Origin: Phyllobates terribilis
Taxonomy: Eukaryota
DNA: 64,000 nt
Assembly (NCBI RefSeq): GCF_046119375.1
Contig: NW_027362764.1
Coordinates: 799,180,001-799,244,000, forward strand
Direction of reading: 5' to 3'
Shown here: in pieces, positions 9,370 to 64,000 of the stretch
Numbering within the stretch: position 1 is the stretch's first letter
How the letters are laid out: each line of letters opens with the position of its first letter
Translations under genes and position numbers: made by a program
The notes under the pieces: model-generated
Database searches by the model: none
Told to the model about the DNA's origin: nothing
Seen by the model: the letters and a program-made list of their open reading frames with translations, nothing else

Positions 9370-9398
9370 ATCTGCCCGGGCCCCGAGAACAACACAAA

Positions 9399-9437
9399 GG
9401 CTCTTTTCAGAGCCACCAAATCCTCCAGGACGAGCTG
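9399..9437 (+). terminator. H3 3' stem-loop plus HDE
   Basis: CAAA-GGCTCT-TTTC-AGAGCC (9399-9414), ACCAA, then GACGAGCTG at 9429-9437. Confidence 0.93.
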
Positions 9438-10250
9438 ATCTCTATTACTCTGATCCCTCAGAAGCGGCCTGGGCTGCGGGATGTCGGTGCTGTTCTCACT
9501 GCTGCGGTTGCTGTCAGATTATACCTGTGATGGAGCTGAGCCCAGTGATGCGACCTGTATGCAGCTTTATAACTGGCAGTGGTTATATTGTAGGTGATCA
9601 GCAGGTGGCGCTCTCTCACATCTGGGGCTGATAAATGATCCGTGAAGTGTCTGCGGAGCAGAGAGATGTCCGCGCTCATCCGCCGCCTCCTCCGCACAGT
9701 CCTCCTCGGGACTCCTCGGTTCTGGCTGATATTACAGTAAGTTCTCGGTTCTGCTGCCGGTAGCCGACATTCTCCACCGCCCTCATATAGGACGTCAGAC
9801 ACTGAAGGGTTAATTCTGCCTCCGCTTTGCCGGTTTCTAGCTCGGTGCTGCTCGGCTGATCCCGCTTCTCCCGCTCTTTCTCTCCATGTAATATTTAGGG
9901 TCAGGACGAGCGTTTCTCGTGCGGTTCGTCACAATCTGTAATAACCGCTGAGAGGAGGCCGCACTGGATCAGGCGCCATCATGATGACAAAGGGTTAATG
10001 GCAGAAGAGATCGCTGCGCCAGTCCGTGTCTTAATGTAACCAGCAGAGCCTGAGGGGAGGGGGCAGGCGACGGCTCTGTGCTCCCGTATGTGAGCATAGG
10101 ACAGGCAAGGGTTAAGGATAAAGCCGCAGCGTCTGCACTCGGACGACGGGCAGGAAAGCAATCAGCCAGTAAAGAGTTAATGTAACGGCTTTCACGAGCA
10201 GCTGTGAAGAGGGCGGGTGGCGGTTGGGTGAGAAAGTCATCTGAACTACG

Positions 10251-10367
10251 TGACGTCACACGTCCCGCCCCTACAGCTGATTGGTGTTTTCTCAAGTCTG
10301 ATCTCCATAGGCGGCTTCAGATCTGTCCAATGAGAGGAGAGGAGGGCGGGGCAGCAGCTTATATAAA
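10251..10367 (+). promoter_or_regulatory. Histone H2A promoter (CRE, CCAAT boxes, TATA)
   Basis: TGACGTCA 10251-10258, ATTGG 10280-10284, CCAAT 10327-10331, TATATAAA 10360-10367. Confidence 0.72.
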
Positions 10368-10401
10368 CCTCCAGCAGCGCGGGCTCCTCACATTCTGCTG
10401 A

Positions 10402-10809
<408 letters not shown>

Positions 10810-10838
10810 GCGCTGCAGCCGATCTGTCCACAACCAAA

Positions 10839-10877
10839 GGCTCTTTTAAGAGCCACCACATCCTCCTGATAAGAGCC
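10839..10877 (+). terminator. H2A 3' stem-loop plus HDE
   Basis: CCAAA-GGCTCT-TTTA-AGAGCC (10839-10854), ACCAC, then AAGAGCC at 10871-10877. Confidence 0.92.
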
Positions 10878-10911
10878 GGCACCGCTGATCCTCCGTCTCC
10901 TATAGTGTGTA

Positions 10912-19439: not shown

Positions 19440-19813
19440 TATGGAGTGGAGCTGAAGGGAGCGGAGCCGCCTGTGTCCCCCATACACTGCACACACTGGA
19501 TATATACATATATATCACAGGAGAGGAGCTGCAGGGAGCGGAACCGCCTGTGTCCCCCATACACTGCACACACTGGATATATACATATATATCACAGGAG
19601 AGGAGCTGCAGGGAGCGGAGCCGCATGTGTCCCCCATACACTGCACAGACTGGATATACAGTATATATATAACAGGAGAGGAGCTGCAGGGAGCGGAGCT
19701 GCCTGTGTCTCCCATACACTGCACACACTGGATATATATATAACAGGAGAGGAGCTGCAGGGAGCGGAGCCGCCTGTGTCCCCCATACACTGCACACACT
19801 GGATATATATATA
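19440..19813. repeat. Second array of minisatellite A, about 5 copies
   Basis: Same unit and orientation as 4287-4816, ending immediately before the truncated H1. Confidence 0.93.
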
Positions 19814-19821: not shown

Positions 19822-20186
19822 AGGTGAAGGTCAGCGGCGCCTCCGGCTCCTTCAAGCTGAACAAGAAGCAGGAGACTAAAGGCAAGCCGGCCAAGAAGAA
19901 GCCGGCGGCTGCGGCCAAACCCAAGAAGCCTGCAGCCAAGAAAGCGGCCAAATCCCCGAAGAAGCCCAAGAAGGCTCCGACCGGAGCCAAGAAAAGCACG
20001 AAAAGGGCCAAGAAGCCCGCAGCAGCCGCGGCCAAGAAAGCAGCCAAGAGCCCCAAGAAGCCAAAGGCCGCTCCGAAGCCCAAGAAGGTGACGAAGAGCC
20101 CGGCTAAGAAGGCGGCCAAACCGAAAGCTGCCAAGAGTCCGGCTAAGAAGGCAACTAAAGCCAAGAATCCCGCGGCCAAAAAATAA
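19822..20186 (+). pseudogene. 5'-truncated histone H1 paralog (no promoter, no ATG, most of the globular domain lost)
   Basis: Homology to the intact H1 begins at AGGTGAAGG (19822, equivalent to 5633). It reads [22 protein letters not shown]...AKNPAAKK, stop at 20184-20186; upstream is minisatellite A. Confidence 0.92.
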
Positions 20187-20216: not shown

Positions 20217-20257
20217 GGCTCTTATCAGAGCCACCACCTTATCTCTGCAGAGCTGTA
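20217..20257 (+). terminator. Intact stem-loop plus HDE of the truncated H1
   Basis: CAAA-GGCTCT-TATC-AGAGCC (20217-20232), ACCAC, then AGAGCTGTA at 20249-20257; same 16-nt spacing as in the intact H1. Confidence 0.93.
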
Positions 20258-23200
20258 TGATCAGTGCCACCAACTTATCCCTGCAGAGCGGTATGATCAG
20301 TGCCAACACCTTATCCCTGCAGAGCTGTATGATAGTGCCACCGCCTTGTCCTTGTAGAGCTGTATAATCAGTGCCACCGCCTTGTCCTTGCAGAGCTGTA
20401 TAATCAGTGCCACCACCTTGTCCCTGCAGAGCTGTATGATCAGTGCCACCACCTAGTCCCTGCAGAGATGTATGATCAGTGCCACCACCTTGTCCCTGCA
20501 GAGCTGTATGATCAGTGCTACCACCTTGTTCCTGGAGAGCTGTTTGATCAGTGCCAACACCTGTCCCCGCATAGCTATATGATCAGTGCCACCACCTTGT
20601 TTCTGCAGAGCTGTATGACCAGTGCCCTCACTTTGTCTCTGCAGAGCTGTATGATAAGTGTCACCACCTTGTCCCTTCAGAGCTGTATGATCAGTGTCAT
20701 CATCCTTGTCCCTGCAGAGCTGTATCATCAGTGTCACCACCTTGTCCCTGCAGAGCTGTATGATCAGTGTCACCACCTTGTCCCTGCAGAGCTGTATGAT
20801 CAGTCCCACAACCTTGTCCCTGGAGAGCAGTTTGATCAGTGCCACCACCTTGTCCCCGCAGAGCTATATGATCAGTGTCACCACCTTGTCCCTGTAGAGC
20901 TGTATGATCAGTGCCACCACCTTGTCCCTGGAGAGCTGTTTGATCAGTGTCACCACCTTGTCCCCGCAGAGCTATATAATCCGTGCCACCACCTTGTCTC
21001 TGCAGAGCTGTATGATCAGTCACCTTGTCTCTGCAGAGCTGTATGATCAGTGCCCCCACCTTGTCTCTGCAGAGCTGTATGATTAGTGTCAGCGCCTTGT
21101 CCCTGCAGAGCTGTATGATCAGTGTCACCACCTTGTCTCTGCAGAGCTGTATGATCAGTGCCCTCACCTTGTCTCTGCAGAGCTGTATGATCAGTGTCAC
21201 CACCTTGTCCCTGCAGAGCTGTATGATCAGTGTCATCATCCTTGTCCCTGCAGAGCTGTATGATCAGTGTAACCACCTTGTCCCTGCAGAGCTGTATGAT
21301 CAGTGCCACAACCTTGTCCCTGGAGAGCTGTTTGATCAGTGCCACCACCTTGCCCCCGCAGAGCTACATGATCAGTGTCACCACTTTGTCCCTGCAGAGC
21401 TGTATGATCAGTGCCACCACCTTGTCCCTGGAGAGCTTATTTCGGACACTTTACTACTCTTCTAGTTAACTCTCTACCACTTCGTCTCCCGCCCACCGAT
21501 AACAGAATAAAATGCCTGTTGCGCCGCCAAACAAACCATTATAAACCTTTTCGTCCCGCAGTACCAAAGGACAATTATTCTATAACCATTCAAATTTTAC
21601 AATCTTAATAACAATTAACTCTCGAACAACCAGAACCTTCTTCAACGGGCCCCATCTGCTCTGATACGTTTTCCATTCTGATCCAGCCAAATTGTCGCCT
21701 CCTCAGGGGTCTGAAAAATGTGTACCCCTCCCAGAGCCACCACCCTTAATTTGGCCGGATATAGCATTGAGTAAGCGATCAGTGCCCTCACCTTGTCTCT
21801 GCAGAGCTGTATGATCAGTGTCACCACCTTGTCCCTTCAGAGCTGTATGATCAGTGTCATCAACCTTGTCCCTGCAGAGCTGTATGATCAGTGTCACCAC
21901 CTTGTCCCTGCAGAGCTGTATGATCAGTGTCACCACCTTGTCCCTGCAGAGCTGTATGATCAGTCCCACAACCTTGTCCCTGGAGAGCAGTTTGATCAGT
22001 GCCAACACCTTGTCCCCGCAGAGCTATATGATCAGTTCCACCACCTTGTCCGTGCAGAGCTGTATGATCAGTGCCCCCACCTTGTCTCTGCAGAGCTGTA
22101 TGATCAGTCACCATCTTGTCTCTGCAGAGCTGTAAGATCAGTGTCACATCCTTGTCCCTGCAGAGCTGTATGATCAGTGTCATCACCTTGTCTCTGCAGA
22201 GCTGTATGATCAGCGTCACCACCTTGTCCCTGCAGAGCTGTATGATCAGTGTCACCACCTCGTCCCTGCAGAGCTGTATGATCAGTGCCACCACCTTGTC
22301 CCTGCAGAGCTGTATGATCAGTGCCACCACATAGTCCCTGCAGAGCTGTATGATCAGTGCCACCACCTCGTCCCTGCAGAGCTGTATGATCAGTGCCACC
22401 ACCTTGTCCTTGCAGAGCTTTATGATCAGTGCCACCACCTTGTCCCTGGAGAGCTGTTTGATCAGTGCCACCACCTTGTCCCCGCATAGCTATATGATCA
22501 GTGCCACCATCTTGTCCCCGCAGAGCTATATAATCAGTGCCACCACCTTGTCCCTGCAGAGCTGTATGATCAGTGCCCCCACCTTGTCTCTGCAGAGCTG
22601 TATGATCAGTCACCACCTTGTCTCTGCAGAGCTGTATGATCAGTGTCACCACCTTGTCCCTGCAGAGCTGTATGATCAGTATCACCACCTCGTCGCTGCA
22701 GAGCTGTATGATCAGTGCCACCACCTTGTCCCTGCACAGCTGTATGATCAGTGCCATCACCTTGTCCCCGCAGAGCTGTATGATCAGTGCCACCATCGCG
22801 TCCCTGCAGAGCTGTATGATCAGTGCCACAACCTTGTCCCTGCAGAGATGTATGATCAGTGCCACCACCTTGTTCCTGGAGAGCTGTTTGATCAGTGCCA
22901 ACACCTGTCCCCGCAGAGCTATATGATCAGTGTCACCACATTGTCCCTGCAGAGCTGTATGATCAGTGCCACCACCTTGTCCCTGGAGGGCTGTTGATCA
23001 GTGCCACCACCTTGTCCCCGCAGAGCTATATGATCAGTGTCACCACCTTGTCCCTGCAGAGCTGTATGATCAGAGCCACCACCTTGTCCCTGGAGAGCTG
23101 TTTGATCAGTGCCACCACCTTGTCCCCGCATAGCTATATGATCAGTGCCACCACCTTGTCCCTGCAGAGCTGTATGATCAGTGCCTTCACCTTGTCTCTG

Positions 23201-47200: not shown

Positions 47201-50200
47201 TGATCAGTGCCACCACCTTGTCCCTGCAGAGATGTATGATCAGTGCCACCACGTTGTCCCTGCAGAGCTGTATGCTCAGTGCCACCACCTTGTTCCTGGA
47301 GAGCTGTTTGATCAGTGCCAACACCTGTCCCCGCAGAGCTATATTATCAGTGTTACCACCTTGTCCCTGCAGAGCTGTATGATCAGTGCCACCACCTTGT
47401 CCCTGGAGGGCTGTTGATCAGTGCCACCACCTTGTCTCCACAGAGCTATATGATCAGTGTCACCACCTTGTCCCTGCAGAGCTGTATGATCAGTGCCACC
47501 ACCTTGTCCCTGGAGAGCTGTTTGATCAGTGCCACCACCTTGTCCCCGCATAGCTATATGATCAGTGCCACCACCTTGTCCCTGCAGAGCTGTATGTTCA
47601 GTGCCCTCACCTTGTCTCTGCAGAGCTGTATGATCAGTGTCACAACCTTGTCCCTGCAGAGCTGTATGATCAGTGTCATCATCCTTTTCCCTGCAGAGCT
47701 GTATGATCAGTGTCACCAACTTGTCCCTGCAGAGCTGTATGATCAGTGTCACCACCTTGTCCCTGCAGAGCTGTATGATCAGTGTCACAACCTTGTCCGT
47801 GGAGAGCTGTTTGATCAGTGCCACCACCTTGTCCCCGCAGAGCTATATGATCAGTGTCACCACCTTGTCCCTGCAGAGTTGTTTGATCAGTACCACCACC
47901 TTGTCCCCGCAGAGCTATATAATCCGTGCCACCACCTTGTCCCCGCAGAGCTGTATGATCAGTGCCCCCACCTTGTCTCTGCAGCGCTGTATGATCAGTG
48001 TCACCACCTTGTCCCTGCAGAGCTGTATGACCAGTGTCAACACCATATCTCTGCAGAGCTGTATGATCAGTGCCCTCACCTTGTCTCTGCAGAGCTGTAT
48101 GATCAGTGCCACCACCTTGTTCCCGCAGAGCTGTATGATCAGTGCCACCACCTTGTCCCTGGAGAGCTGTTTGATCAGTGCCAAGGCCTTGTCCCCGTAT
48201 AGCTATATGATCAGTGCCACCACCATGTCCCTTCATAGCTGTATGATCAGTACCCTCACCTTGTCTCTGCAGAGCTGTATGATCAGTTTCACCACCTTGT
48301 CCCTGCAGAACTGTACGATCAGTGTCATCATCCTTGTCCCTGCAGAGCTGTATGATCAGGGTCACCAACTTGTCCCTGCAGAGCTGTATGATCACCAGCT
48401 GTAGGATCACCACCTTGTCCCCGCACATGATCAGTGTCACCACATTGTCCCTGCAGAGCTGTATGATCAGTGTCACCACCTTGTCCCTGCAGAGCTGTAT
48501 GATCAGTGCCACCACCTTGTCCCTGCAGAGCTGTATGATCAGTGCCAAAACCTTGTCCCTGGAGAGCTTTTTGATCAGTGCCACCACCTTGTCCTCGCAG
48601 AGCTACATGATCAGTGTCACCACCTTATCCCAGCAGAGCTGTATGATCAGTGCCACCACCTTGTTCCTGGAGAGCTGTTTGATCAGTGCCACCACCTTGT
48701 CCCCGCAGAGCTATATAATCAGTGCCACCACCTTGTCCCTGCAGAGCTGTATAATCAGTGCCCCCACCTTGTCTCTGCAGAGCTGTATGATCAGTCACCA
48801 CCTTGTCTCTGCAGAGCTGTATGATCAGTGTCACAACATTGTCCCTGCAGAGCTGTATGATCATTGTCACCACCTTGTCTCTGCAGAGCTGTATGATCAG
48901 TGTCAACACCTTGTCCCTGCAGAGCTGTATGATCAGTACCACCACATTCTCCCCTTAGAGCTGCATGATCACAGCCAAAACCTCCTCCCTGCAGAGCTGT
49001 ATGATCAGTGCCACCACCTTCTCCCCTTAGAGCTGTATGATCAGTGCCACCACCTCCTCCCTCCAGAGCTGCATGATCAGTGTCACCACCTTGTCACTGC
49101 AGAGCTGTATGATCAGTGTCACCGCCTTGTCCTTGCAGAGCTGTATAATCAGTGCCACCACCTTGTCCTTTCAGAGCTGTATGATCAGTGCCACCTTCGT
49201 GTCCCTGCAGAGCTGTATGATCAGTGCCACCATCTTGTCCCTGCAGAGCTGTATGATCAGTGCCACAACCTTGTCCCTGCAGAGCTGTATGATCAGTGCC
49301 ACCACCTTGTCCCTGCAGAGATGTATGATCAGTGCCACCACGTTGTCCCTGCAGAGCTGTATGATCAGTGCCACCACCTTGTTCCTGGAGAGCTGTTTGA
49401 TCAGTGCCAACTCCTGTCCCCGCAGAGCTATATGATCAGTGTCACCACCTTGTCCCTGCAGAGCTGTATGATCAATGCCACCACCTTGTTACTGGAGGGT
49501 TGTTGATCAGTGACACCACCTTTTCCCCGCAGAGCTATATGATCAGTGTCACCACCTTGTCCCTGGAGAGCTGTTTGATCAGTGCCACCACCTTGTCCCC
49601 GCATAGCTATATGATCAGTGCCACCACCTTGTCCCTGAAGAGCTGTATGATCAGTGCCCTCACCTTGTCTCTGCAGAGCTGTATGATCAGTGTCATCATC
49701 CTTGTCCCAGCAGAGCTGTATGATCAGTGTCACCAACTTGTCTCTGCAGAGCTGTATGATCAGTGTCACCACCTTGTCCCTGCAGAGCTGTATGATCAGT
49801 GCCAAAACCTTGTCCCTGGAGAGCTGTTTGGTCAGTGCCACCACCTTGTCCCCGCCGAGCTATATGATCAGTGTCACCACCTTGTCCCTGCAGAGCTGTA
49901 TGATCAGTGCCACCACCTTGTCCCCGCAGAGCTATATAATCCATGCCACCACCTTGTCCCTGCAGAGCTGTATGATCAGTGCCACCACCTTGACCCTGGA
50001 GAGCTGTTTGATCAGTGCCCCCACCTAGTCTCCGCAGCGCTGTATGATCAGTGTCACCACCTTGTCTCTGCAGAGCTGTATGATCAGTGCCCTCACCTTG
50101 TCTCTGCAGAGCTGTATGATCAGTGCCACCACCTTGTCCCCGCAGAGCTACATGATCAGTGTCACCACCTTGTCCCTGCAGAACTGTATGATCAGTGCCA

Positions 50201-53200
50201 CCACCTTGTCCCTGGAGAGCTGTTTGATCAGTGCCACCGCCTTGTCCCCGCATAGCTATATGATCAGTGCCACCACCATGTCCCTGCAGAGCTGTATGAT
50301 CAGTGCCCTCACCTTGCCTCTGCAGAGCTGTATGATCAGTGTCACCACCTTGTCCCTGCAGAGCTGTACGATCAGTGTCATCATCCTTGTCCCTGCAGAG
50401 CTGTACGATCAGTGTCACCACCTTGTCCCTGCAGAGCTCTTTGATCAGTGCCACCACCATGTCCCCGCACAGCTACATGATCAGTGTCACCACATTGTCC
50501 CTGCAGAGCTGTATGATCAGTGTCACCACCTTGTCCCTGCAGAGCTGTATGATCAGTGTCACCACCTGGTCCCTGCAGAGCTGTATGATCAGTGCCACCA
50601 CCTTGTCCCTGCAGAGCTGTATGATCAGTGCCAAAACCTTGTCCCTGGAGAGCTGTTTGATCAGTGCCACCGCCTTGTCCTCGCAGAGCTACATGATCAG
50701 TGTCACCACCTTATCCCAGAAGAGCTGTATGATCAGTGCCACCACCTTGTTCCTGGAGAGCTGTTTGATCAATGCCTCCACCTTGTCCCCGCAGAGCTAT
50801 ATAATCAGTGCCACCAGCTTGTCCCTGCAGAGCTGTATAATCAGTGCCCCCACCTTGTCTCTGCAGAGCTGTATGATCAGTCACCACCTTGTCTCTGCAG
50901 AGCTGTATGATCAGTGTCACTACCTTGTCCCTGCAGAGCTTCATGATCATTGTCACCACCTTGTCTCTGCAGAGCTGTATGATCAGTGTCAACACCTTCT
51001 CCCTGCAGAGCTGTATGATCAGTGCCACCACCTTCTCCCCTTAGAGCTGAATGATCACAGCCACCACCTCCTCCCTACAGAGCTGTATGATCAGTGCCAC
51101 CATCTTGTCCCTCCAGAGCTGTATGATCAGTGCCACCACCTTGTCCCCTCAGAGCTGTATGATCAGTGACACCACCTTGTCCCCTCAGAGCTGTATGATC
51201 AGTGCCACCACCTTGTCTCCTCAGAGCTGTATGATCAGTGCCACCACCTTGTCTCCGTGGAGTTGTATAATCAGTGTCACCACCTTGTCCCTGCAGAGCT
51301 GTAAAATCAGTGTCACCACCTTATCCCTGCAGAGCTGTATGATCAGTGCCACTGCCTTGTCCTTGCAGAGCTGTATAATCAGTGCCACCACCTTGTCCTT
51401 TCAGAGCTGTAAAATCAGGGCCACCACCTTGTCCCTGCAGAGCTGCATGATCAGTGCCACCACCTTGTCCCTGCAGAGCTGTATGATCAGTGTTACCACC
51501 TTGTCCCTGCAGAGCTGTATGATCAGTGCCACCACCTCGTCCCTGCAGAGCTGTATGATCAGTGCCATCACCTTGTCCCCGCAGAGCTGTATGATAAGTG
51601 CCACCATCGCGTCCCTGCAGAGCTGTATGATCAGTGCCACCACCTTGTCCCCGCTGAGTTGTATGATCAGTGCCACAACCTTGTCCCTGCAGAGCTGTGT
51701 GATCAGTGCCACCACCTTGTCCCTGCAGAGATGTATGATCAGAGCCACCACGTTGTCCCTGCAGAGCTGTATGATCAGTGCCACCACCTTGTTCCTGGAG
51801 AGCTGTTTGATCAATGCCAACACCTGTCCCCGCAGAGCTATATGATCAGTGTCACCACCTTGTCCCTGGAGAGCTGTATGATCAGTGCCACCACCTTGTC
51901 CCTGGAGGGCTGTTGATCAGTGCCATCACCTTGTCCCCGCAGAGCTATATGATCAGTGTCACCACCTTGTCCCTGCAGAGCTGTATGATCAGTGCCACCA
52001 CCATGTCCCTGGAGAGCTGTTTGATCAGTGCCACCACCTTGTTCCCGCATAGCTATATGATCAGTGCCACCACCTTGTCCCTGCAGAGCTGTATGATCAG
52101 TGCCACCACCTTGTCCCTGGAGGGTTGTTGATCAGTGCCACCACCTTTTCCCCGCAGAGCTATATGATCAGTGTCACCACCTTGTCCCTGCAGAGCTGTA
52201 TGATCAGTGCCACCACCTTGTCCCTGGAGAGCTGTTTGATCAGTGCCACCACCTTGTCCCCGCATAGCTATATGATCAGTGCCACCACCTTGTCCCTGAA
52301 GAGCTGTATGATCAGTGCCCTCACCTTGTCTCTGCAGAGCTGTATGATCAGTGTCATCATCCTTGTCCCAGCAGAGCTGTATGATCAGTGTCACCAACTT
52401 GTCTCTGCAGAGCTGTATGATCAGTGTCACCACCTTGTCCCTGCAGAGCTGTATGATCAGTGCCAAAACCTTGTCCCTGGAGAGCTGTTTGGTCAGTGCC
52501 ACCACCTTGTCCCCGCAGAGCTATATGATCAGTGTCACCACCTTGTCCCTGCAGAGCTGTATGATCAGTGCCACCACCTTGTCCCCGCAGAGCTATATAA
52601 TCCATGCCACCACCTTGTCCCTGCAGAGCTGTATGATCAGTGCCACCACCTTGACCCTGGAGAGCTGTTTGATCAGTGCCCCCACCTAGTCTCCGCAGCG
52701 CTGTATGATCAGTGTCACCACCTTGTCTCTGCAGAGCTGTATGATCAGTGCCCTCACCTTGTCTCTGCAGAGCTGTATGATCAGTGCCACCACCTTGTCC
52801 CCGCAGAGCTACATGATCAGTGTCACCACCTTGTCCCTGCAGAACTGTATGATCAGTGCCACCACCTTGTCCCTGGAGAGCTGTTTGATCAGTGCCACCG
52901 CCTTGTCCCCGCATAGCTATATGATCAGTGCCACCACCATGTCCCTGCAGAGCTGTATGATCAGTGCCCTCACCTTGCCTCTGCAGAGCTGTATGATCAG
53001 TGTCACCACCTTGTCCCTGCAGAGCTGTACGATCAGTGTCATCATCCTTGTCCCTGCAGAGCTGTACGATCAGTGTCACCACCTTGTCCCTGCAGAGCTC
53101 TTTGATCAGTGCCACCACCATGTCCCCGCACAGCTACATGATCAGTGTCACCACATTGTCCCTGCAGAGCTGTATGATCAGTGTCACCACCTTGTCCCTG

Positions 53201-56200
53201 CAGAGCTGTATGATCAGTGTCACCACCTGGTCCCTGCAGAGCTGTATGATCAGTGCCACCACCTTGTCCCTGCAGAGCTGTATGATCAGTGCCAAAATCT
53301 TGTCCCTGGAGAGCTGTTTGATCAGTGCCACCGCCTTGTCCTCGCAGAGCTACATGATCAGTGTCACCACCTTATCCCAGAAGAGCTGTATGATCAGTGC
53401 CACCACCTTGTTCCTGGAGAGCTGTTTGATCAATGCCTCCACCTTGTCCCCGCAGAGCTATATAATCAGTGCCACCACCTTGTCCCTGCAGAGCTGTATA
53501 ATCAGTGCGCCCACCTTGTCTCTGCAGAGCTGTATGATCAGTCACCACCTTGTCTCTGCAGAGCTGTATGATCAGTGTCACTACCTTGTCCCTGCAGAGC
53601 TTCATGATCATTGTCACCACCTTGTCTCTGCAGAGCTGTATGATCAGTGTCAACACCTTCTCCCTGCAGAGCTGTATGATCAGTGCCACCACCTTCTCCC
53701 CTTAGAGCTGAATGATCACAGCCACCACCTCCTCCCTACAGAGCTGTATGATCAGTGCCACCATCTTGTCTCTCCAGAGCTGTATGATCAGTGCCACCAC
53801 CTTGTCCCCTCAGAGCTGTATGATCAGTGACACCACCTTGTCCCCTCAGAGCTGTATGATCAGTGCCACCACCTTGTCTCCTCAGAGCTGTATGATCAGT
53901 GCCACCACCTTGTCTCCGCGGAGTTGTATAATCAGTGTCACCACCTTGTCCCTGCAGAGCTGTAAAATCAGTGTCACCACCTTATCCCTGCAGAGCTGTA
54001 TGATCAGTGCCACTGCCTTGTCCTTGCAGAGCTGTATAATCAGTGCCACCACCTTGTCCTTTCAGAGCTGTAAAATCAGGGCCACCACCTTGTCCCTGCA
54101 GAGCTGCATGATCAGTGCCACCACCTTGTCCCTGCAGAGCTGTATGATCAGTGTTACCACCTTGTCCCTGCAGAGCTGTATGATCAGTGCCACCACCTCG
54201 TCCCTGCAGAGCTGTATGATCAGTGCCATCACCTTGTCCCCGCAGAGCTGTATGATAAGTGCCACCATCGCGTCCCTGCAGAGCTGTATGATCAGTGCCA
54301 CCACCTTGTCCCCGCTGAGTTGTATGATCAGTGCCACAACCTTGTCCCTGCAGAGCTGTATGATCAGTGCCACCACCTTGTCCCTGCAGAGATGTATGAT
54401 CAGAGCCACCACGTTGTCCCTGCAGAGCTGTATGATCAGTGCCACCACCTTGTTCCTGGAGAGCTGTTTGATCAATGCCAACACCTGTCCCCGCAGAGCT
54501 ATATGATCAGTGTCACCACCTTGTCCCTGGAGAGCTGTATGATCAGTGCCACCACCTTGTCCCTGGAGGGCTGTTGATCAGTGCCATCACCTTGTCCCCG
54601 CAGAGCTATATGATCAGTGTCACCACCTTGTCCCTGCAGAGCTGTATCATCAGTGCCACCACCATGTCCCTGGAGAGCTGTTTGATCAGTGCCACCACCT
54701 TGTTCCCGCATAGCTATATGATCAGTGCCACCACCTTGTCCCTGCAGAGCTGTATGATCAGTGCCACCACCTTGTCCCTGGAGGGTTGTTGATCAGTGCC
54801 ACCACCTTTTCCCCGCAGAGCTATATGATCAGTGTCACCACCTTGTCCCTGCAGAGCTGTATGATCAGTGCCACCACCTTGTCCCTGGAGAGCTGTTTGA
54901 TCAGTGCCACCACCTTGTCCCCGCATAGCTATATGATCAGTGCCACCACCTTGTCCCTGAAGAGCTGTATGATCAGTGCCCTCACCTTGTCTCTGCAGAG
55001 CTGTATGATCAGTGTCATCATCCTTGTCCCAGCAGAGCTGTATGATCAGTGTCACCAACTTGTCTCTGCAGAGCTGTATGATCAGTGTCACCACCTTGTC
55101 CCTGCAGAGCTGTATGATCAGTGCCAAAACCTTGTCCCTGGAGAGCTGTTTGGTCAGTGCCACCACCTTGTCCCCGCAGAGCTGTATGATCAGTGTCACC
55201 ACCTTGTCCCTGCAGAGCTGTATGATCAGTGCCAACACCTTGTCCCCGCAGAGCTATATAATCCGTGCCACCACATTGTCCCTGCAGAGCTGTATGATCA
55301 GTGCCACCACCTTGACCCTGGAGAGCTGTTTGATCAGTGCCCCCACCTTGTCTCTGCAGCGCTGTATGATCAGTGTCACCACCTTGTCTCTGCAGAGCTG
55401 TAAGATCAGTGCCCTCACCTTGTCTCTGCAGAGCTGTATGATCAGTGCCACCACCTTGTCCCCGCAGAGCTACATGATCAGTGTCACCACCTTGTCCCTG
55501 CAGAACTGTATGATCAGTGCCACCACCTTGTCCCTGGAGAGCTGTTTGATCAGTGCCACCGCCTTGTCCCCGCATAGCTATATGATCAGTGCCACCACCA
55601 TGTCCCTGCAGAGCTGTATGATCAGTGCCCTCACCTTGTCTCTGCAGAGCTGTATGATCAGTGTCACCACCTTGTCCCTGCAGAGCTGTCCGATCAGTGT
55701 CATCATCCTTGTCCCTGCAGAGCTGTACGATCAGTGTCACCACCTTGTCCCTGCAGAGCTGTTTGATCAGTGCCACCACCATGTCCCCGCACAGCTACAT
55801 GATCAGTGTCACCACATTGTCCCTGCAGAGCTGTATGATCAGTGTCACCACCTTGTCCCTGCAGAGCTGTATGATCAGTGTCACCACCTGGTCCCTGCAG
55901 AGCTGTATGATCACTGCCACCACCTTGTCCCTGCAGAGCTGTATGATCAGTGCCAAAACCTTGTCCCCGGAGAGCTGTTTGATCAGTGCCACCGCCTTGT
56001 GCTCGCAGAGCTACATGATCAGTGTCACCACCTTATCCCAGAAGAGTTGTATGATCAGTGCCACCACCTTGTTCCTGGAGAGCTGTTTGATCAATGCCAC
56101 CACCTTGTCCCTGCAGAGCTATATAATCAGTGCCACCACCTTGTCCCTGCAGAGCTGTATAATCAGTGCCCCCACCTTGTCTCTGCAGAGCTGTATGATC

Positions 56201-59200
56201 AGTGTCACAACCTTGTCCCTGCAGAGCTACATGATCAGTGTCACCACCTTGTCCCTGCAGAACTACATGATCAGTGCCACCACCTTGTCCCTGGAGAGCT
56301 GTTTGATCAGTGCCACCGCCTTGTCCCCGCATAGCTATATGATCAGTGCCACCACCATGTCCCTGCAGAGCTGTATGATCAGTGCCCTCACCTTGCCTCT
56401 GCAGAGCTGTATGATCAGTGTCACCACTTTGTCCCTGCAGAGCTGTACGATCAGTGTCATCATCCTTGTCCCTGCAGAGCTGTACGATCAGTGTCACCAC
56501 CTTGTCCCTGCAGAGCTGTTTGATCAGTGCCACCACCATGTCCCCGCACAGCTACATGATCAGTGTCACCACATTGTCCCTGCAGAGCTCTATGATCAGT
56601 GTCACCACCTTGTCCCTGCAGAGCTGTATGATCAGTGTCACCACCTGGTCCCTGCAGAGCTGTATGATCAGTGCCACCACCTTGTCCCTGCAGAGCTGTA
56701 TGATCAGTGCCAAAACCTTGTCCCTGGAGAGCTGTTTGATCAGTGCCACCGCCTTCTCGCAGAGCTACATCATCAGTGTCACCACCTTATCCCAGAAGAG
56801 CTGTATGATCAGTGCCACCACCTTGTTCCTGGAGAGCTGTTTGATCAATGCCTCCACCTTGTCCCCGCAGAGCTATATAATCAGTGCCACCACCTTGTCC
56901 CTGCAGAGCTGTATAATCAGTGCCCCCACCTTGTCTCTGCAGAGCTGTATGATCAGTCACCACCTTGTCTCTGCAGAGCTGTATGATCAGTGTCACTACC
57001 TTGTCCCTGCAGAGCTTCATGATCATTGTCACCACCTTGTCTCTGCAGAGCTGTATGATCAGTGTCAACACCTTCTCCCTGCAGAGCTGTATGATCAGTG
57101 CCACCACCTTCTCCCCTTAGAGCTGAATGATCACAGCCACCACCTCCTCCCTACAGAGCTGTATGATCTGTGCCACCATCTTGTCCCTCCAGAGCTGTAT
57201 GATCAGTGCCACCACCTTGTCCCCTCAGAGCTGTATGATCAGTGACACCACCTTGTCCCCTCAGAGCTGTATGATCAGTGCCACCACCTTGTCTCCTCAG
57301 AGCTGTATGATCAGTGCCACCACCTTGTCTCCGCGGAGTTGTATAATCAGTGTCACCACCTTGTCCCTGCAGAGCTGTAAAATCAGTGTCACCATCTTAT
57401 CCCTGCAGAGCTGTATGATCAGTGCCACTGCCTTGTCCTTGCAGAGCTGTATAATCAGTGCCACCACCTTGTCCTTTCAGAGCTGTAAAATCAGGGCCAC
57501 CACCTTGTCCCTGCAGAGCTGCATGATCAGTGCCACCACCTTGTCCCTGCTGAGCTGTATGATCAGTGTTACCACCTTGTCCCTGCAGAGCTGTATGATC
57601 AGTGCCACCACCTCGTCCCTGCAGAGCTGTATGATCAGTGCCATCACCTTGTCCCCGCAGAGCTGTATGATAAGTGCCACCATCGCGTCCCTGCAGAGCT
57701 GTATGATCAGTGCCACCACCTTGTCCCCGCTGAGTTGTATGATCAGTGCCACAACCTTGTCCCTGCAGAGCTGTATGATCAGTGCCACCACCTTGTCCCT
57801 GCAGAGATGTATGATCAGAGCCACCACATTGTCCCAGCAGAGCTGTATGATCAGTGCCACCACCTTGTTCCTGGAGAGCTGTTTGACCAATGCCAACACC
57901 TGTCCCCGCAGAGCTATATGATCAGTGTCACCACCTTGTCCCTGGAGAGCTGTATGATCAGTGCCACCACCTTGTCCCTGGAGGGCTGTTGATCAGTGCC
58001 ATCACCTTGTCCCCGCAGAGCTATATGATCAGTGTCACCACCTTGTCCCTGCAGAGCTGTATGATCAGTGCCACCACCATGTCCCTGGAGAGCTGTTTGA
58101 TCAGTGCCACCACCTTGTTCCCGCATAGCTATATAATCAGTGCCACCACCTTGTCCCTGCAGAGGTGTATGATCAGTGCCACCACCTTGTCCCTGGAGGG
58201 TTGTTGATCAGTGCCACCACCTTATCCCCGCAGAGCTATATGATCAGTGTCACCACCTTGTCCCTGCAGAGCTGTATGATCAGTGCCACCACCTTGTCCC
58301 TGGAGAGCTGTTTGATCAGTGCCACCACCTTGTCCCCGCATAGCTATATGATCAGTGCCACCACCTTGTCCCTGAAGAGCTGTATGATCAGTGCCCTCAC
58401 CTTGTCTCTGCAGAGCTGTATGATCAGTGTCATCATTCTTGTCCCAGCAGAGCTGTATGATCAGTGTCACCAACTTGTCTCTGCAGAGCTGTATGATCAG
58501 TGTCACCACCTTGTCCCTGCAGAGCTGTATGATCAGTGCCAAAACCTTGTCCCTGGAGAGCTGTTTGGTCAGTGCCACCACCTTGTCCCCGCAGAGCTGT
58601 ATGATCAGTGTCACCACCTTGTCCCTGCAGAGCTGTATGATCAGTGCCACCACCTTGTCCCCGCAGAGCTAAATAATCCGTGCCACCACCTTGTCCCTGC
58701 AGAGCTGTATGATCAGTGCCACCACCTTGACCCTGGAGAGCTGTTTGATCAGTGCCCCCAACTTGTCTCTGCAGCGCTGTATGATCAGTGTCACCACCTT
58801 GTCTCTGCAGAGCTGTAAGATCAGTGCCCTCACCTTGTCTCTGCAGAGCTGTATGATCAGTGCCACCACCTTGTCCCCGCAGAGCTACATGATCAGTGTC
58901 ACCACCTTGTCCCTGCAGAACTGTATGATCAGTGCCACCACCTTGTCCCTGGAGAGCTGTTTGATCAGTGCCACCGCCTTGTCCCCGCATAGCTATATGA
59001 TCAGTGCCACCACCATGTCCCTGCAGAGCTGTATGATCAGTGCCCTCACCTTGTCTCTGCAGAGCTGTATGATCAGTGTCACCACCTTGTCCCTGCAGAG
59101 CTGTCCGATCAGTGTCATCATCCTTGTCCCTGCAGAGCTGTACGATCAGTGTCACCACCTTGTCCCTGCAGAGCTGTTTGATCAGTGCCACCACCATGTC

Positions 59201-62200
59201 CCCGCACAGCTACATGATCAGTGTCACCACATTGTCCCTGCAGAGCTGTATGATCAGTGTCACCACTTTGTCCCTGCAGAGCTGTATGATCAGTGTCACC
59301 ACCTGGTCCCTGCAGAGCTGTATGATCAGTGTAACCACCTTGTCCCTTCAGAGCTGTATGATCAGTGCCACAACCTTGTCCCTGGAGAGCTGTTTGATCA
59401 GTGCCACCACGTTGTCCCCGCAGAGCTATATGATCAGTGTCACCACCTTCTCCCTGCAGAGCTGTAGGATCAGTGACATCACCTTGTCCCTGGAGAGCTG
59501 TGTGATCAGTGCTACAACCTTGTCCCCGCAGAGCTATATGATCAGTGCCACCACCTTGTCCCTGCAGAGCTGTATGATCAGTGCCCCCACATTGTCTCTG
59601 CAGAGCTGTATGATCAGAGTCACCACCATGTCCCTGCAGAGCTGTATGATCAGTGTCACCACCTTGTCTCTGCAGAGCTGTATGATCAGTGTCACCACCT
59701 TGTCCCTGCAGAGCTGTATGATCAGTGCCACCACCTTGTCCCCTCAGAGTTGCATGATCACAGCCACCACCTTTTCCCTGCAGAGCTGTATGATCAGTGC
59801 CACCACCTTGTCCCTGCAGAGCTGTATGATCAGTGCCACCACCTTGTCCACTCAGAGCTTTATGATCAGTGCCAATAACCTCGTCCCCTCAGACCTGTAT
59901 GATCAGTGCCTCCACCTTGTCCCTTCAGTGCTGTATGATCAGTGCCACCACCTTGTCCCTGCAGAGCTGTATGATCAGTGCCACCACCTTGTCCACTCAG
60001 AGCTTTATGATCAGTGCCAATAACCTCGTCCCCTCAGACCTGTATGATCAGTGCCTCCACCTTGTCCCTTCAGTTCTGTGTGATCAGTGTCACCACCTTG
60101 TCCCTGCAGATCTGTATGATCAGTGCTACCACCTTGTCCCTGGAGAGCTGTTTGATCAGTGCCACCACCTTGTCCCCGCAGAGCTATATAGTCAGTGCCA
60201 CCACTCTGGCCCTGCAGAGCTGTATGATCAGTGCCCCCATCTTGTCTCTGCAGAGCTGTATGATCAGTGTCACCACCTTGTCTCTGCAGAGCTGCATGAT
60301 AAGTGTCCTCACCTTGTCTCTTCAGAGATCTATGATCAGTCTCACCACCTTGTCCCTACAGAGCTGTATGATCAGTGTCATCATCCTTGTCCCTGCAGAG
60401 CTGTATGATCAGTGTCACCACCTTGTCCCTGCTGAGCTGTATATTCAGTGTCACCACCTTGTCCCTGCAGAGCTGTATGGTCAGTGTCACAACCTTGTCC
60501 CTAGAGAGCTGTTTGATCAGTGCCACCACCTTGTCCCCGCAGAGCTGCATGATCAGTGTCACCACCTTGTCCCTGCAGAGCTGTATGATCAGTGCCACCA
60601 CCTTGTCCCTGGAGAGGTGTTTGATTAGTGCCACCACCTTGTCCCCGCAAAACTATATAATCAGTGCCACCACCTTGTGCCTGCAGAGCTGTATGATCAG
60701 TGCCCCCACCTTGTCTCTGCAGAGCTGTATGATCAGTCACCAACTTGTCTCTGCAGAGCTGTATGATCATTTTCACAACATTGTACCTGCAGAGCTGTAT
60801 GATCAGTGTCAACACTTTGTCTCTGCAGAGCTGCATGATCACAGCCACCACCTCCTCCCTGCAGAGCTGTATGATCAGTGCCACCACCTTGTCCCTGCAG
60901 ATCGGTATGATCAGTGCCACCAACTTGTCCCCTTGTCGCCTCAGAGCTGTATGATCAGTGCCACCACCTTGTCCCCTCAGAGCTGTATGATCAGTGCCAA
61001 CACCTTTTCCCATCAGAGCTGTATGATCAGTGCCACCACCTTGTCCCCGCAGATTTGTATGATCAGTGTCACCACCTTGTCCCTGCAGAGCTGTATGATC
61101 AGTGTCACCACCTTGTCCCTTAACAGCTGTATGATCAGTGCCACCACCTTGTCCCTGGAGATCTGTTTAATCAGTACCACCACCTTGTCTCTGCAGAGCT
61201 GTATGATCAGTGTCACCACCTTGTCCCTGCAGAGGTGTATGATCAGTGTCAGCATCCTTGTCCCTGGAGAGCTGTTTGATCAGTGCCACCACCTTGTCCC
61301 CGCAGAGCTATATGATCAGTGCCACCACCATGTCCCTGCAGAGCTGTATGATCTGTGCCCCCACCTTGTCTCTGCAGAGCTGTATGATCAGTGTCTCCAC
61401 CTTGTCTCTGCAGAGCCGTATGATCAGTGTCACCACCTTGTCTCTGCAGAGCTGTATGATCAGTTCCACCACCTTGTCCACTCAGAGCTGCATGATCACA
61501 GCCACCACCTCCTCCCTGCAGAGCTGTATGATCAGTGCCACCACCTTGTCCCCTCAGAGCTGTATGATTAGTGTCACCACCTTGTCCCATCAGAGCTGTA
61601 TGATCAGTGTCACCACCTTGTCCCAGCTGAGCTTTATGATAAGTGTCACCACCTTGTCCCTGCAGAGCTGTATGATCAGTAGAACCACTTTGTCCCTGGA
61701 GAGCTGTTTGATCAGTGCCACCACCTTGTCCCCGCAGAGCTGTATGATCAGTGCCACCAACTTGTCTCTGCAGAGCTGTTTGATCAGTGCCACCACCTTG
61801 TCTCTGCAGAGTTGCATGATCAGTGTCACCACCTTGTCCCTGCAGAGCTGTATGATCAGTGCCCCCACCTTGTCTCTGCAGAGCTGTATGATCAGTGTCA
61901 CAACTTTGTCTCTGCAGAGTTGTACGATCAGTGTCTCCACCTTGTCCCTACAGAGCTGTATGATCAGTGCCACCACCTTGTCCCTGCAGAGCTGTATGAT
62001 CAGTGCAACCAACTTGTACCCGCAGAACTATATGATCAGTGCCACCATCATGTCTCTGCAGAGCTGTTTGTTTAGTGCCCCCACATTGTCTCTGCAGAGC
62101 AGTTTGATCAGTGCCACCACCTTGTCCCTGCAGAGCTGTATGATCAGTGCCACCACCTTGTCCCTGCAGAGCTGTATGATCAGTGCCACCACCTTGTCCA

Positions 62201-64000
62201 CTCAGAGCTGCATGATCACAGCCAACACCTCCTCCCTGCAGAGCTGTATGATCAGTGCCACCAACTTGTCCCTGCAGATCTGTATGATGAGTGCCACCAC
62301 CTTGTCCCCTCAGAGCTGAATGATCAGTGCCACCACCTTGTACCCTCAGGGCTGTATGATCAGCGCCACCACATTGTCCCCTCAGAGCTGTATGATCAGT
62401 GCCACCACCTTGTCCCCGCAGAGCTGTATGATCAGTGTCACCACCTTGTCCCTGCAGAGCTGTTTGATTAGTGTCAGCGCCTTGTCCCTGCAGAGCTGTA
62501 TGATCAGTACCACCACATTGTTCCTGGAGAGCTGTATGATCAGTGCCACCACCATGTCCCTGCAGAGCTGTATGATTAGTGCCCCCACCTTGTCTCTGCA
62601 GAGCTGTATGACAGTGTCACCACCTTGTCTCTGCAGAGCTGTATGATCAGTGTCACCACCTTGTCCCTGAAGAGGTGTATGATCAGTGCCACCACCTTGT
62701 CCCTGGAGAACTGTTTGATCAGTGCCACCACCTTGTCCCCACAGAGCTATATAATCAATGCCACCACCTTGTCTCTGCAGAGCTGTATGATCAGTCACCA
62801 CCTTGTCTCTGAAGAGCTGTATGATCAGTGGCACCGCCTTGTCTCTGCAGAGTTGTATGATCAGTGTCACCACCTTGTCCCTGCAGAGCTGTATGATCAG
62901 TGTCATTATCCTTGTCCCTGGAGAGCTGTTTGATCAGTGCCACCACCTTGTCCCCGCAGAGCTGTATGATTAGTGCCCCCACCTTGTCTCTGCAGAGCTG
63001 TATGACAGTGTCACCACACTTGTCCCTGCAGAGCTGTATGATCAGTGTCACCGCCTTGTCCCTGCCGAGCTGTATGATTAGTGCCCCCACCTTGTCTCTG
63101 CAGAACTGTATGATCAGTGTCACCACCTTGTCTCTGCAGAGTTGTACGATCAGAGTCACCACCTTGTCCCTACAGAGCTGTATGATCAGTGCCACCACCT
63201 TGTCCCTGCAGAGCTGTATGATCAGCGCCACCACCATGTCCCCGAAGAGCTATATGATCAGTGCCACCAAAATGTCTCTGCAGAGCTGTATGATTAGTGC
63301 CCCACCTTGTCTCTGCAGAGCAGTTTGATCAGTGCCACCACCTTGTCCCTGCAGAGCTGTATGATCAGTGCCACCACCTTGTCCCTGCAGAGCTGTATGA
63401 TCACAGCCACCATCTCCTCCCTGCAGAGCTGTATGATCAGTGCTACAACCTTGTCCCTGCAGAGCTGTATGATCAGTGCCACAACCTTGTCCCCTCAGAG
63501 CTTTATGATCAGTGCCACCACCTCGTCCCCTCAGACCTGTATGATCAGTGCCACCACCTTGTCCCTTCAGTGCTGTATGATCAGTGCCACCACCTTGTCC
63601 CTGCAGAGTTGTATGATCAGTGCCACCCCCTTGTCCCATCAGAGCTGCATGATCACAGCCACCACCTCCTCCCTGCAGAGCTGTATGATCAGTGCCACCA
63701 CCTTGTACCTGCAGAGCTGTATGATCAGTGCAACCACCTTGTCCCCTCAGAGCTGTATGATCCGTGCCACCACCATGTCCCCTCAGAGCTGTATGATCAG
63801 TGCCACCACATTGTCCCCTCAGAGCTGTATGATCAGTGCCACCACCTTGTCCCCGCAGAGCTGCATGATCAGTGTCCCCACCTTGTCTCTGCAGAGCTGT
63901 ATGATCAGTTTCACAACTTTGTCTCTGCAGAGTTTTACGATCAGTGTCACCACCTTGTCCCTACAGAGCTGTATGATCAGTGCCACCACCTTGTCCCTGC
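20224..64000 (+). repeat. 36-bp satellite, about 1,200 head-to-tail monomers, derived from the H1 3'-processing signal; continues past the window end
   Basis: Consensus GATCAGTGCCACCACCTTGTCCCTGCAGAGCTGTAT in a single orientation. (43,777 - 339)/36 is about 1,207. Each consensus monomer has PstI, AluI and BclI sites. The first monomer overlaps the H1 stem-loop. Confidence 0.99.
21438..21776 (-). mobile_element. Internal L1 fragment (ORF1 C-terminus plus inter-ORF sequence) inserted in the satellite
   Basis: Minus strand IAYSMLYPAKLRVVALGGVHIFQTPEEATIWLDQN...stop (21776-21642) resembles the L1 ORF1p C-terminal YPAKL...F.TPEEA..WL motif. There is no polyA tail. This is the only non-satellite insert I saw in 44 kb. 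Confidence 0.75.

What the first reader, a model, noticed from the sequence alone, without database searches (positions are those of the whole stretch)
20217..64000. A satellite of more than 43 kb built from the histone mRNA 3'-processing signal: about 1,200 tandem U7 snRNP binding sites
Seen: the array starts inside the H1 stem-loop. The gene reads GGCTCT-T-ATCAGAGCC-ACCACC-TTATCTCTGC-AGAGCTGTA-TG and the monomer reads ATCAGTGCC-ACCACC-TTGTCCCTGC-AGAGCTGTA-TG. Each 36-mer therefore contains the loop end and 3' arm, the ACCAC cleavage region, the native spacer and the HDE, but not the 5' arm, so it has no SLBP hairpin. Some monomers still read ATCAGAGCC (about 23068, 46628, 51738). Established (recalled): the vertebrate U7 5' end contains GUUACAGCUCUUUU, so AGAGCTGTA gives 9 contiguous base pairs; U7 measures the CPSF73 cut from the HDE. 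Inference: a sense transcript would be a polymer of correctly spaced SLBP-less processing cassettes. It could sequester or concentrate U7 snRNP, be cut into 36-nt pieces, or act as a repeated terminator. I know of no described satellite with this origin. Origin from the H1 3' end is strongly supported; function is untested and neutral expansion remains possible.
Basis: partly seen in the sequence, partly recalled or inferred. Interest (0 to 1): 0.93.

Follow-up and report, generated by a model that had tools for sequence, protein, structure and literature searches.

The report
Satellite grown from histone H1 tail
A block of at least 43.8 kb made of a 36-base repeat was copied from the RNA-processing signal just behind a histone H1 gene; the origin is real and apparently undescribed, but every test I could run points to ordinary neutral satellite DNA, not a working array of U7-binding sites.

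Summary
A head-to-tail 36-bp array of 1,218 units fills 20224-64000 and runs off the window. Its first unit is the native H1 3' end, from the last three loop bases through the 3' arm, ACCAC, the spacer and the U7-complementary core AGAGCTGTA.

The H1 in front of the array is a 5'-truncated pseudogene. An intact, diverged H1 at 5344-5979 carries the same repeat in 12 copies, so the repeat is older than this locus.

The functional reading is not supported:
- **Conservation:** the U7-pairing core is 93.5% conserved, against 93.2% expected from base composition.
- **Recent changes:** between duplicated blocks they hit the core at the neutral rate (60 of 266, 66.5 expected, p=0.40).
- **Intact cores:** only 713 units (59%) keep the 9-nt core, and 511 (42%) also keep ACCA and the native spacing.
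- **Hairpin:** no unit beyond the first has the SLBP hairpin.
- **Growth:** the array grew by multi-kb block duplication.
- **RNA:** no listed RNA run holds the array. Short repeat contigs in RNA libraries cannot be told from DNA carry-over.

My best reading is neutral, gene-derived satellite DNA (0.72). First-stage notes, unchecked, report similar arrays behind other H1 and H2B genes of this genome.

The parts
20224..64000 (+). 36-bp satellite, 1,218 units, cut by the window end. Consensus: ATCAGTGCCACCACCTTGTCCCTGCAGAGCTGTATG.
   Evidence: TRF; wrap-around alignment and per-position table.
20217..20232 (+). Histone stem-loop of the truncated H1 (GGCTCTTATCAGAGCC, loop UAUC). It is the only hairpin in the whole array region.
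   Evidence: Rfam Histone3: 32.8 bits, E=4.5e-6 at 20212-20258. It was the only hit in 20200-64000 at E<=10.
20224..20259 (+). Founding unit, which is the native H1 3' signal: loop end plus 3' arm, ACCACC, spacer TTATCTCTGC, HDE core AGAGCTGTA, then TG.
   Evidence: Sequence. Duplex with the mouse U7 5' end is -14.0 kcal/mol with 9 contiguous pairs.
19824..20186 (+). H1 remnant holding the C-terminal lysine-rich tail only (120 codons). Promoter, N-terminus and globular domain are missing.
   Evidence: Alignment to the intact H1 starts at about 19826; mean column identity is 90% over the whole alignment. No Linker_histone domain was found.
19443..19813 (+). 77-bp minisatellite that abuts the broken H1. 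The related 71-bp array lies about 530 bp upstream of the intact H1, so the junction here marks a deletion.
   Evidence: TRF; alignment.
5344..5979 (+). Intact histone H1 gene (211 aa), a diverged paralogue of the remnant.
   Evidence: ORF; Pfam Linker_histone 2.1e-22; covered by contigs of RNA runs.
6016..6455 (+). The same 36-bp repeat in 12.3 copies, directly behind the intact H1 and starting inside its stem-loop (6009-6024). It ends in unique sequence at 6456.
   Evidence: TRF; sequence. Its variant mix differs from the big array: CCCCTCAG and CCCCGCAG dominate.
49471..59432 (+). Zone of block duplications of about 74 and 95 units (2.7-3.4 kb) at 98.5-98.9% identity, showing how the array grows.
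   Evidence: Lagged unit-by-unit comparison.
7694..10879 (+). H4 (7694-8005), H3 (8959-9369) and H2A (10423-10809), each with its own stem-loop and a single HDE-like core at the same distance. Used as the internal comparison.
   Evidence: ORFs; Pfam; Rfam Histone3 hits at 8033, 9394 and 10834; duplex energies of -14.6, -10.5 and -13.9.

Best explanation
This is satellite DNA of genic origin. A 36-bp piece of the H1 3' flank, from loop base 2 of the histone stem-loop to two bases past the U7-pairing element, was duplicated in tandem. The cause was probably slippage or unequal exchange at short homology around the ATCA/ATGAT junction (inferred). H1 genes of this genome carry the resulting minisatellite as a short array; 12 copies behind the intact H1 are shown here. 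Behind a 5'-truncated, promoter-less H1 remnant the array expanded to at least 43.8 kb by repeated unequal exchange in multi-kb registers (shown). Sequence change inside the array is neutral with respect to the U7-pairing core (shown).

As RNA, the units would be hairpin-less cassettes with a 9-bp U7 match. Published biochemistry predicts weak binding and little or no cleavage for such substrates (inferred). I conclude that the array has no required RNA-level role. Its persistence needs only the usual gain-and-loss dynamics of tandem repeats, in a region where 13% of the flanking 20 kb is already minisatellite.
For: - **Origin and direction:**
- **Older than this locus:** two H1 paralogues with diverged coding sequence (about 90% mean column identity over the aligned stretch) and diverged 3' UTRs both carry the repeat.
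- **Neutral core:** HDE conservation is 93.5%, against 93.8% for the 3' arm, 92.4% for ACCACC and 89.7% for the spacer. Base composition predicts 93.2%. Rare variants average 29.4 per position in the core and 29.9 elsewhere. Differences between recently duplicated blocks fall in the core 60 times of 266, with 66.5 expected (p=0.40).
- **Satellite dynamics:** there is no higher-order period. 64% of units lie in duplicated blocks of at least 15 units at 97% identity or more. The array edge is more diverged (89.4%) than the interior (about 93%).
- **No promoter:** the H1 in front is truncated.
- **RNA:** no listed RNA run holds the array, at 0.01-0.02 of sampled words. No contig links H1 mRNA to the repeat.
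- **Local base rate:** six unrelated minisatellites cover 12.8% of 1-20216. Short-monomer tandem repeats are reported as typical of frog genomes (PMC12054243).
Against: - RNA run X26 holds short (48-66 nt) contigs of the repeat at word depth 40-142, above its H1 coding depth of 1-21. Some transcription is therefore not excluded.
- 59% of units still carry a perfect 9-nt core, so the array would be highly multivalent for U7 if it were transcribed.
- Unchecked first-stage notes report HDE-containing arrays behind H2B genes too, with another period. If those arose independently, recurrence would call for either a mutational hotspot at histone 3' ends or selection.
- A function that needs only many approximate sites would leave no per-position signal.
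Confidence: 0.72

Rival explanations
1. U7 concentrator or sponge. The array is transcribed, for example by read-through on lampbrush loops or in early embryos. The multivalent HDE RNA then binds U7 snRNP, either anchoring or enlarging the histone locus body ('sphere') at the locus or buffering free U7.
For: - 713 perfect 9-bp sites; the duplex energy of -14.0 kcal/mol is like that of the window's functional H4 and H2A sites.
- Amphibian oocyte spheres sit at histone loci and contain U7 snRNP (PMC12046345; PMC3648425).
- Satellite read-through transcription is known on lampbrush chromosomes (PMC2114352).
- Repeat transcripts with excess splice-donor motifs nucleate snRNP condensates in chicken oocytes (bioRxiv 10.64898/2026.03.19.712899).
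- Repeat words are present in RNA run X26.
Against: - The core is not conserved above background.
- There is no promoter in front of the array.
- No listed RNA run holds the array.
- The X26 signal is compatible with DNA carry-over, given the roughly 10^3-fold or higher genomic word depth of the repeat.
- Histone locus body assembly is initiated by NPAT/Mxc and FLASH and does not need U7 snRNP (PMC10730174).
- This species' U7 sequence was not checked.
Confidence: 0.1
2. Fail-safe processing or termination array. The short arrays behind working H1 genes give U7 snRNP extra chances to cut read-through transcripts and trigger CPSF73 5'-3' degradation and Pol II release. On this view the 43.8-kb block is a runaway expansion of that useful element after the gene in front was broken.
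For: - The intact H1 keeps 12 units, each with ACCAC and native spacing to the core.
- First-stage notes (unchecked) give 10 and 16 units behind other H1 genes.
- Processing is coupled to termination in the histone locus body (PMC4896052, abstract).
Against: - Without a stem-loop, and with only 9 bp, cleavage is expected to be very poor.
- H4, H3 and H2A in the same cluster manage with a single HDE.
- The RNA contigs gave no read-through evidence.
- Similar copy numbers can result from concerted evolution alone.
Confidence: 0.12
3. Assembly artefact. The repeat is real but the 43.8-kb length and internal order are mis-assembled or inflated.
For: Long low-complexity arrays are error-prone. I could not lay reads on the big array itself, because only one read-laying run is allowed.
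Against: There are 535 distinct unit sequences, about 14% divergence between units, and structured block duplications instead of a collapsed or perfect repeat. A DNA run shows very high word depth for the repeat.
Confidence: 0.04

Closest known systems
PcP190 satellite of frogs, derived from 5S rDNA (Vittorazzi et al. 2011, as cited in PMC12191414)
   Same: It is a satellite family born from part of a tandemly repeated multigene family, and it was then amplified into large blocks.
   Different: The source here is a 36-bp RNA-processing signal (half a hairpin, the cleavage site and the U7-pairing element) from a histone gene flank, not a transcribed RNA gene. The array is still attached in register to its parent gene.
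Newt (Notophthalmus) histone clusters embedded in satellite 1, transcribed by read-through on lampbrush loops. Diaz et al. 1981 and Gall et al. 1981 are listed in the references of PMC2114352. The details of this arrangement come from my own knowledge.
   Same: Histone gene clusters are flanked by tens of kb of satellite, and the locus type is the one that carries U7-rich spheres in oocytes.
   Different: As far as I know, newt satellite 1 (a unit of about 220 bp) is unrelated in sequence to the histone genes. Here the satellite is itself a copy of the histone 3' signal. Transcription is not shown here.
Canonical histone pre-mRNA 3' processing signal (stem-loop, ACCCA, HDE)
   Same: The units keep the ACCAC region, the native 11-nt spacer and a 9-nt core complementary to the vertebrate U7 5' end.
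   Different: The 5' arm is absent, so there is no SLBP hairpin. The 3' arm reads AGTGCC instead of AGAGCC. Only 42% of units keep all the remaining parts.
Repeat-derived architectural RNAs, for example the chicken LL2R repeat (bioRxiv 10.64898/2026.03.19.712899)
   Same: It is a tandem array whose transcript would carry one snRNP-binding motif per unit.
   Different: For LL2R, transcription, a promoter and condensate formation are shown. Here none of these is shown, and the motif is not under detectable constraint.

Membership tests
Histone 3' processing signal | 16-nt stem-loop (6-bp stem, 4-nt loop) that binds SLBP | tested here: not met
   Only the native first unit scores with Rfam Histone3 (32.8 bits at 20212-20258). 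No other hit in 20200-64000 at E<=10. The units lack the 5' arm.
Histone 3' processing signal | ACCCA-type cleavage region directly after the stem, with the HDE about 11-12 nt further on | tested here: met
   ACCACC is 86-96% conserved per position and the spacing is native. 511 of 1,218 units keep ACCA, the exact core and an undeleted spacer.
Histone 3' processing signal | [quoted passage not shown] | tested here: inconclusive
   There are 9 contiguous pairs at -14.0 kcal/mol with the mouse or human U7 5' end taken from PMC7026596. The species' own U7 gene is not in the window and could not be fetched. The HDE cores of the window's H4, H3 and H2A imply a similar U7.
Histone 3' processing signal | Cleavage by U7 snRNP/CPSF73 | not testable with these tools
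   Published data argue against efficient cleavage of substrates with 9 bp and no stem-loop (PMC7026596).
Satellite DNA | Long head-to-tail array of one unit, abundant in the genome | tested here: met
   1,218 units in at least 43.8 kb. DNA-run word depth on the repeat is 33,000-114,000, against 18.4 on unique flank. That depth is a summed measure, not a copy number.
Satellite DNA | Growth and homogenisation by unequal exchange: block duplications, and edges more diverged than the interior | tested here: met
   Blocks of 74-177 units at 97.8-98.9% identity, and 64% of units in such blocks. The first tenth is 89.4% identical to consensus, the interior about 93%.
Satellite DNA | No position-specific selective constraint | tested here: met
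   Core conservation is 93.5% observed against 93.2% expected. Recent differences in the core number 60 of 266, with 66.5 expected, p=0.40.
Gene-derived satellite (PcP190-like) | Unit homologous to part of a multigene-family member | tested here: met
   The unit is collinear with the H1 3' end at two H1 loci.
Architectural or sponge repeat RNA | The array is transcribed, with strand specificity | tested here: inconclusive
   No listed RNA run holds the array. Short repeat contigs in RNA run X26 cannot be separated from DNA carry-over. The contigs are unstranded, and no satellite control could be laid.
Architectural or sponge repeat RNA | The RNA recruits its binding partner into a body | not testable with these tools
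   This needs FISH or immunostaining, or RIP.

The most novel reading that the evidence does not exclude
In oocytes or cleavage-stage embryos the H1-derived arrays, and perhaps the reported H2B-derived ones, are read through. Their RNA is a polymer of hairpin-less HDE cassettes. It holds U7 snRNP at the histone loci, helping to size or anchor the U7-rich spheres (histone locus bodies) or to buffer U7 supply. This would be a natural case of a processing signal turned into an architectural repeat.
Probability: 0.08. Interest if true: 0.85.

Novelty: new variant of a known kind. Interest (0 to 1): 0.45.

Why it matters
The array gives a cleanly documented birth of a satellite. The founding unit, its boundaries, the parent gene and the growth mode are all visible in one window, and the source element is an RNA-processing signal. 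My literature searches found no description of a satellite with this source. Those searches cover a limited library, so this is not proof of absence.

The array is also a natural substrate for two questions. Can U7 snRNP engage HDEs without SLBP in vivo? Does repeat RNA contribute to the U7-rich bodies at amphibian-type histone loci? If it is neutral, as I think, the value is for satellite evolution and for annotation. Gene finders will call ORFs of up to 827 aa in the array, and motif scanners will call hundreds of false histone 3' ends.

Tried and rejected
- **Higher-order repeat:** none. Lags 1-119 all give 86-88% identity.
- **Hidden hairpins or other RNA families in the array:** none on either strand at E<=10. 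A consensus trimer folds only into a generic structure.
- **Coding repeat:** ORFs up to 827 aa exist, but 36 bp is 12 codons and four of the six consensus frames are open. I rejected them as mechanical.
- **Reverse origin** (H1 borrowed its signal from an older satellite): rejected. The unit contains the universal stem-loop 3' half plus ACCAC.
- **TE-borne array:** rejected. The array is continuous with H1 coding sequence at two loci.
- **Xenopus U7 sequence:** PMC46907 and PMC307171 are not held. The alignment in Marz et al. is a figure.
- **Taxon:** the atlas search gave only 'Chordata'.
- **Literature search for the unit sequence:** no paper.
- **Fuzzy-regex segmentation:** my first attempt failed. 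I replaced it with wrap-around dynamic programming.
Full report
**What is there.** Tandem Repeats Finder reports a single array at 20224-64000 with period 36, 1217.7 copies and 86% matches. I aligned the stretch to a cyclic copy of the consensus. This gave 1,218 units with only 88 inserted and 148 deleted bases and no foreign insertion. Mean identity to the consensus is 92.3%. Only 75 units are exact and 535 unit sequences are distinct. The array runs off the window, so 43.8 kb is a minimum. A DNA run of the same organism gives summed word depths of 33,000-114,000 on 36-mer bins of the 12-copy array, against 18.4 on the adjacent single-copy flank. This is not a copy number, but it shows that the repeat is real and very abundant in the genome.

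**Origin.** The array begins inside a histone stem-loop (GGCTCTTATCAGAGCC, 20217-20232). This is the only Rfam Histone3 match in 20200-64000, even at E<=10. The first unit (20224-20259) is the native H1 3' signal: the last three loop bases, the 3' arm, ACCACC, a 10-nt spacer, AGAGCTGTA and TG. Later units differ from it by drift; for example the 3' arm reads AGTGCC. The unit contains the universally conserved 3' half of the histone hairpin plus the ACCAC cleavage region. The direction is therefore from gene to satellite, not the reverse.

- The H1 in front of the array is a remnant. Homology to H1 starts at about 19826, in the middle of the coding sequence and directly after a 77-bp minisatellite. 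The 120-codon remnant has no linker-histone domain. It has no promoter.
- An intact H1 lies at 5344-5979 (Pfam Linker_histone 2.1e-22; covered by RNA-run contigs). It carries the same repeat in 12.3 copies at 6016-6455, again starting inside its stem-loop.
- The two H1 copies show about 90% mean column identity over the aligned stretch, with in-frame indels and dissimilar 3' UTRs. The repeat therefore predates this locus, or has spread among H1 genes.
- The two arrays have different variant mixes, as expected for locus-wise homogenisation.
- The rest of the cluster is H4, H3 and H2A on the same strand. Each has one stem-loop and one HDE-like core at the same distance.
- Six unrelated minisatellites occupy 12.8% of the first 20.2 kb. 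Tandem duplication is evidently common in these spacers.

**U7 pairing.** The human and mouse U7 5' ends printed in PMC7026596 contain GUUACAGCUCUUUU. AGAGCUGUA pairs with it over 9 contiguous Watson-Crick pairs at -14.0 kcal/mol. That is similar to the window's H4 (-14.6) and H2A (-13.9) sites and stronger than H3 (-10.5). Random 46-mers from the window average -9.1 kcal/mol, with a first percentile of -16.2, so the energy alone is not exceptional. The exact 9-nt core is present in 713 units (59%), of which 35 pair over 10 contiguous bases. ACCA, the core and the undeleted spacer are all present in 511 units (42%). I could not obtain the species' own U7, nor a Xenopus sequence from the held papers. 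The premise therefore rests on conservation of the U7 5' box among vertebrates and on the HDE cores of the neighbouring genes.

**Test of constraint.**
- Per-position conservation is 93.5% for the core, 93.8% for the loop and 3'-arm part, 92.4% for ACCACC and 89.7% for the spacer.
- C and G sites are generally more mutable than A and T sites here. Allowing for that, the core's expected conservation is 93.2%.
- Rare variants average 29.4 per position in the core and 29.9 elsewhere.
- As a cleaner sample of recent changes, I compared seven pairs of recently duplicated blocks. Of 266 differences, 60 fall in the core, with 66.5 expected (binomial p=0.40).
- The best-conserved stretch is ATCA at unit positions 1-4 (97-99%), not the HDE.

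There is thus no sign of selection on U7 pairing. A role that needs only many approximate sites would escape this test.

**Growth mode.** No higher-order period exists, and unit-to-unit identity is 86-88% at all lags. Even so, 64% of units lie in blocks of at least 15 units that recur at 97% identity or more. One zone at 49471-59432 is built from blocks about 74 and 95 units apart, at 98.5-98.9% identity. The edge next to the gene is more diverged (89.4%) than the interior (about 93%). These are the usual marks of unequal exchange in a satellite.

**RNA evidence.**
- With a 2-kb piece of the array as query, no listed RNA run held it. RNA runs of the same species had 0.01-0.02 of the sampled words.
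- I laid three RNA runs and one DNA run on 5200-6800. The H1 coding region is covered in the RNA runs, and the unique flank after the 12-copy array has depth 0.
- Run X26 has short (48-66 nt) repeat contigs at depth 40-142, above its H1 depth of 1-21.
- The repeat's genomic word depth is 10^3-fold or more above single copy, so a trace of DNA in the library would give the same picture.
- The contigs are unstranded, and none bridges H1 mRNA into the repeat.

I rate transcription as unresolved, with no positive evidence.

**Expected behaviour as RNA.** PMC7026596 reports three relevant results:
- Strong duplexes can be processed without SLBP.
- A substrate reduced to 9 uninterrupted pairs is cleaved under 5% even with its stem-loop. 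[quoted passage not shown]

The units here have 9 pairs and no hairpin. Cutting into 36-nt pieces, or efficient repeated termination, is therefore unlikely. Transient U7 binding remains possible.

The histone locus body review states that NPAT/Mxc and FLASH initiate body assembly and that U7 snRNP is dispensable for it (PMC10730174). This lowers the prior for a nucleating role. Amphibian oocyte spheres do sit at histone loci and contain U7 snRNP (PMC12046345; PMC3648425). Repeat RNAs with snRNP-binding motifs can build condensates on lampbrush chromosomes. The architectural reading is therefore not excluded, and I give it about 0.08-0.10.

**Comparison with known cases.**
- The nearest kind is gene-derived satellite DNA, such as the frog PcP190 family from 5S rDNA.
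- The nearest genomic arrangement is the newt histone cluster embedded in satellite 1. Its references are listed in PMC2114352; the details are from my own knowledge.
- What is new is the source: a histone 3' processing signal, still attached in register to its parent gene.
- My searches found no description of such a satellite or of its sequence. The library is limited.
- First-stage notes of this scan, which I could not check, list the same 36-mer behind other H1 genes (10, 16 and about 320 copies) and HDE-containing arrays of another period behind H2B genes. If the H2B arrays are independent, the recurrence deserves a genome-wide test.

**Verdict.** The functional proposals are unsupported and partly contradicted. 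The most likely reading is neutral satellite DNA of genic origin that expanded behind a dead H1 copy (0.72). It is a new variant of a known kind, of moderate interest.

Noticed in passing
window 6016-6455: The intact H1 (5344-5979) is followed by 12.3 copies of the same 36-bp unit. The array ends in unique sequence at 6456, after a partial unit (ATCAGTGCCA then TGATGGAG). This suggests that the ancestral flank continued ...GCTGTATGATGGAG, and that short ATGAT/ATCA homology lay at the duplication boundary.
   Followed up: partly
window 4282-4816 and 19443-19813: A 71/77-bp minisatellite precedes both H1 copies. At the second locus it abuts the H1 mid-coding sequence, marking a deletion of about 0.8 kb that removed the promoter and the N-terminal and globular half.
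   Followed up: partly
window 6804-7288, 13118-13304, 17183-17745: Three further unrelated minisatellites (32 bp; 39/75 bp; 31 bp with a 185-bp higher-order period). With the others, they make 12.8% of the first 20.2 kb tandem repeat.
   Followed up: no
window 6009-6024, 8038-8053, 20217-20232, 10839-10854: The H1 and H4 stem-loops have loop UAUC instead of the usual UUUC, and H2A has UUUA. The H4 signal scores only 26.6 bits with Rfam Histone3 (gathering score 34).
   Followed up: no
window 5344-10809: The cluster reads H1-H4-H3-H2A, all on the + strand. No H2B ORF of 80 aa or more was seen in 1-20300.
   Followed up: no
window 728-871, 922-1017, 1068-1210, 1606-1696: Long, near-perfect hairpins give sub-threshold hits to plant miRNA families in Rfam. 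They look like MITE-type inverted-repeat elements, not miRNA genes.
   Followed up: no
window 18111-18665 (-) and 19089-19442 (+): Transposon debris lies just upstream of the broken H1. One is a 184-aa ORF with no Pfam hit; from its sequence alone I read it as the tail of a reverse-transcriptase-type element. The other is a DDE_3 transposase fragment (E=0.001, below the Pfam cut-off).
   Followed up: partly
window 2785-2955: A run of 171 N (assembly gap or masked), left as it is.
   Followed up: no
window 20300-64000: ORFs of up to 827 aa run through the satellite, because 36 bp is 12 codons and four of the six consensus frames lack stops. Gene finders may mis-call them.
   Followed up: yes
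window 6075 and 6451 (loose ends in DNA run X1): DNA contigs leave the 36-bp repeat into sequences that differ from this window. The repeat therefore borders other sequence elsewhere in the genome.
   Followed up: no
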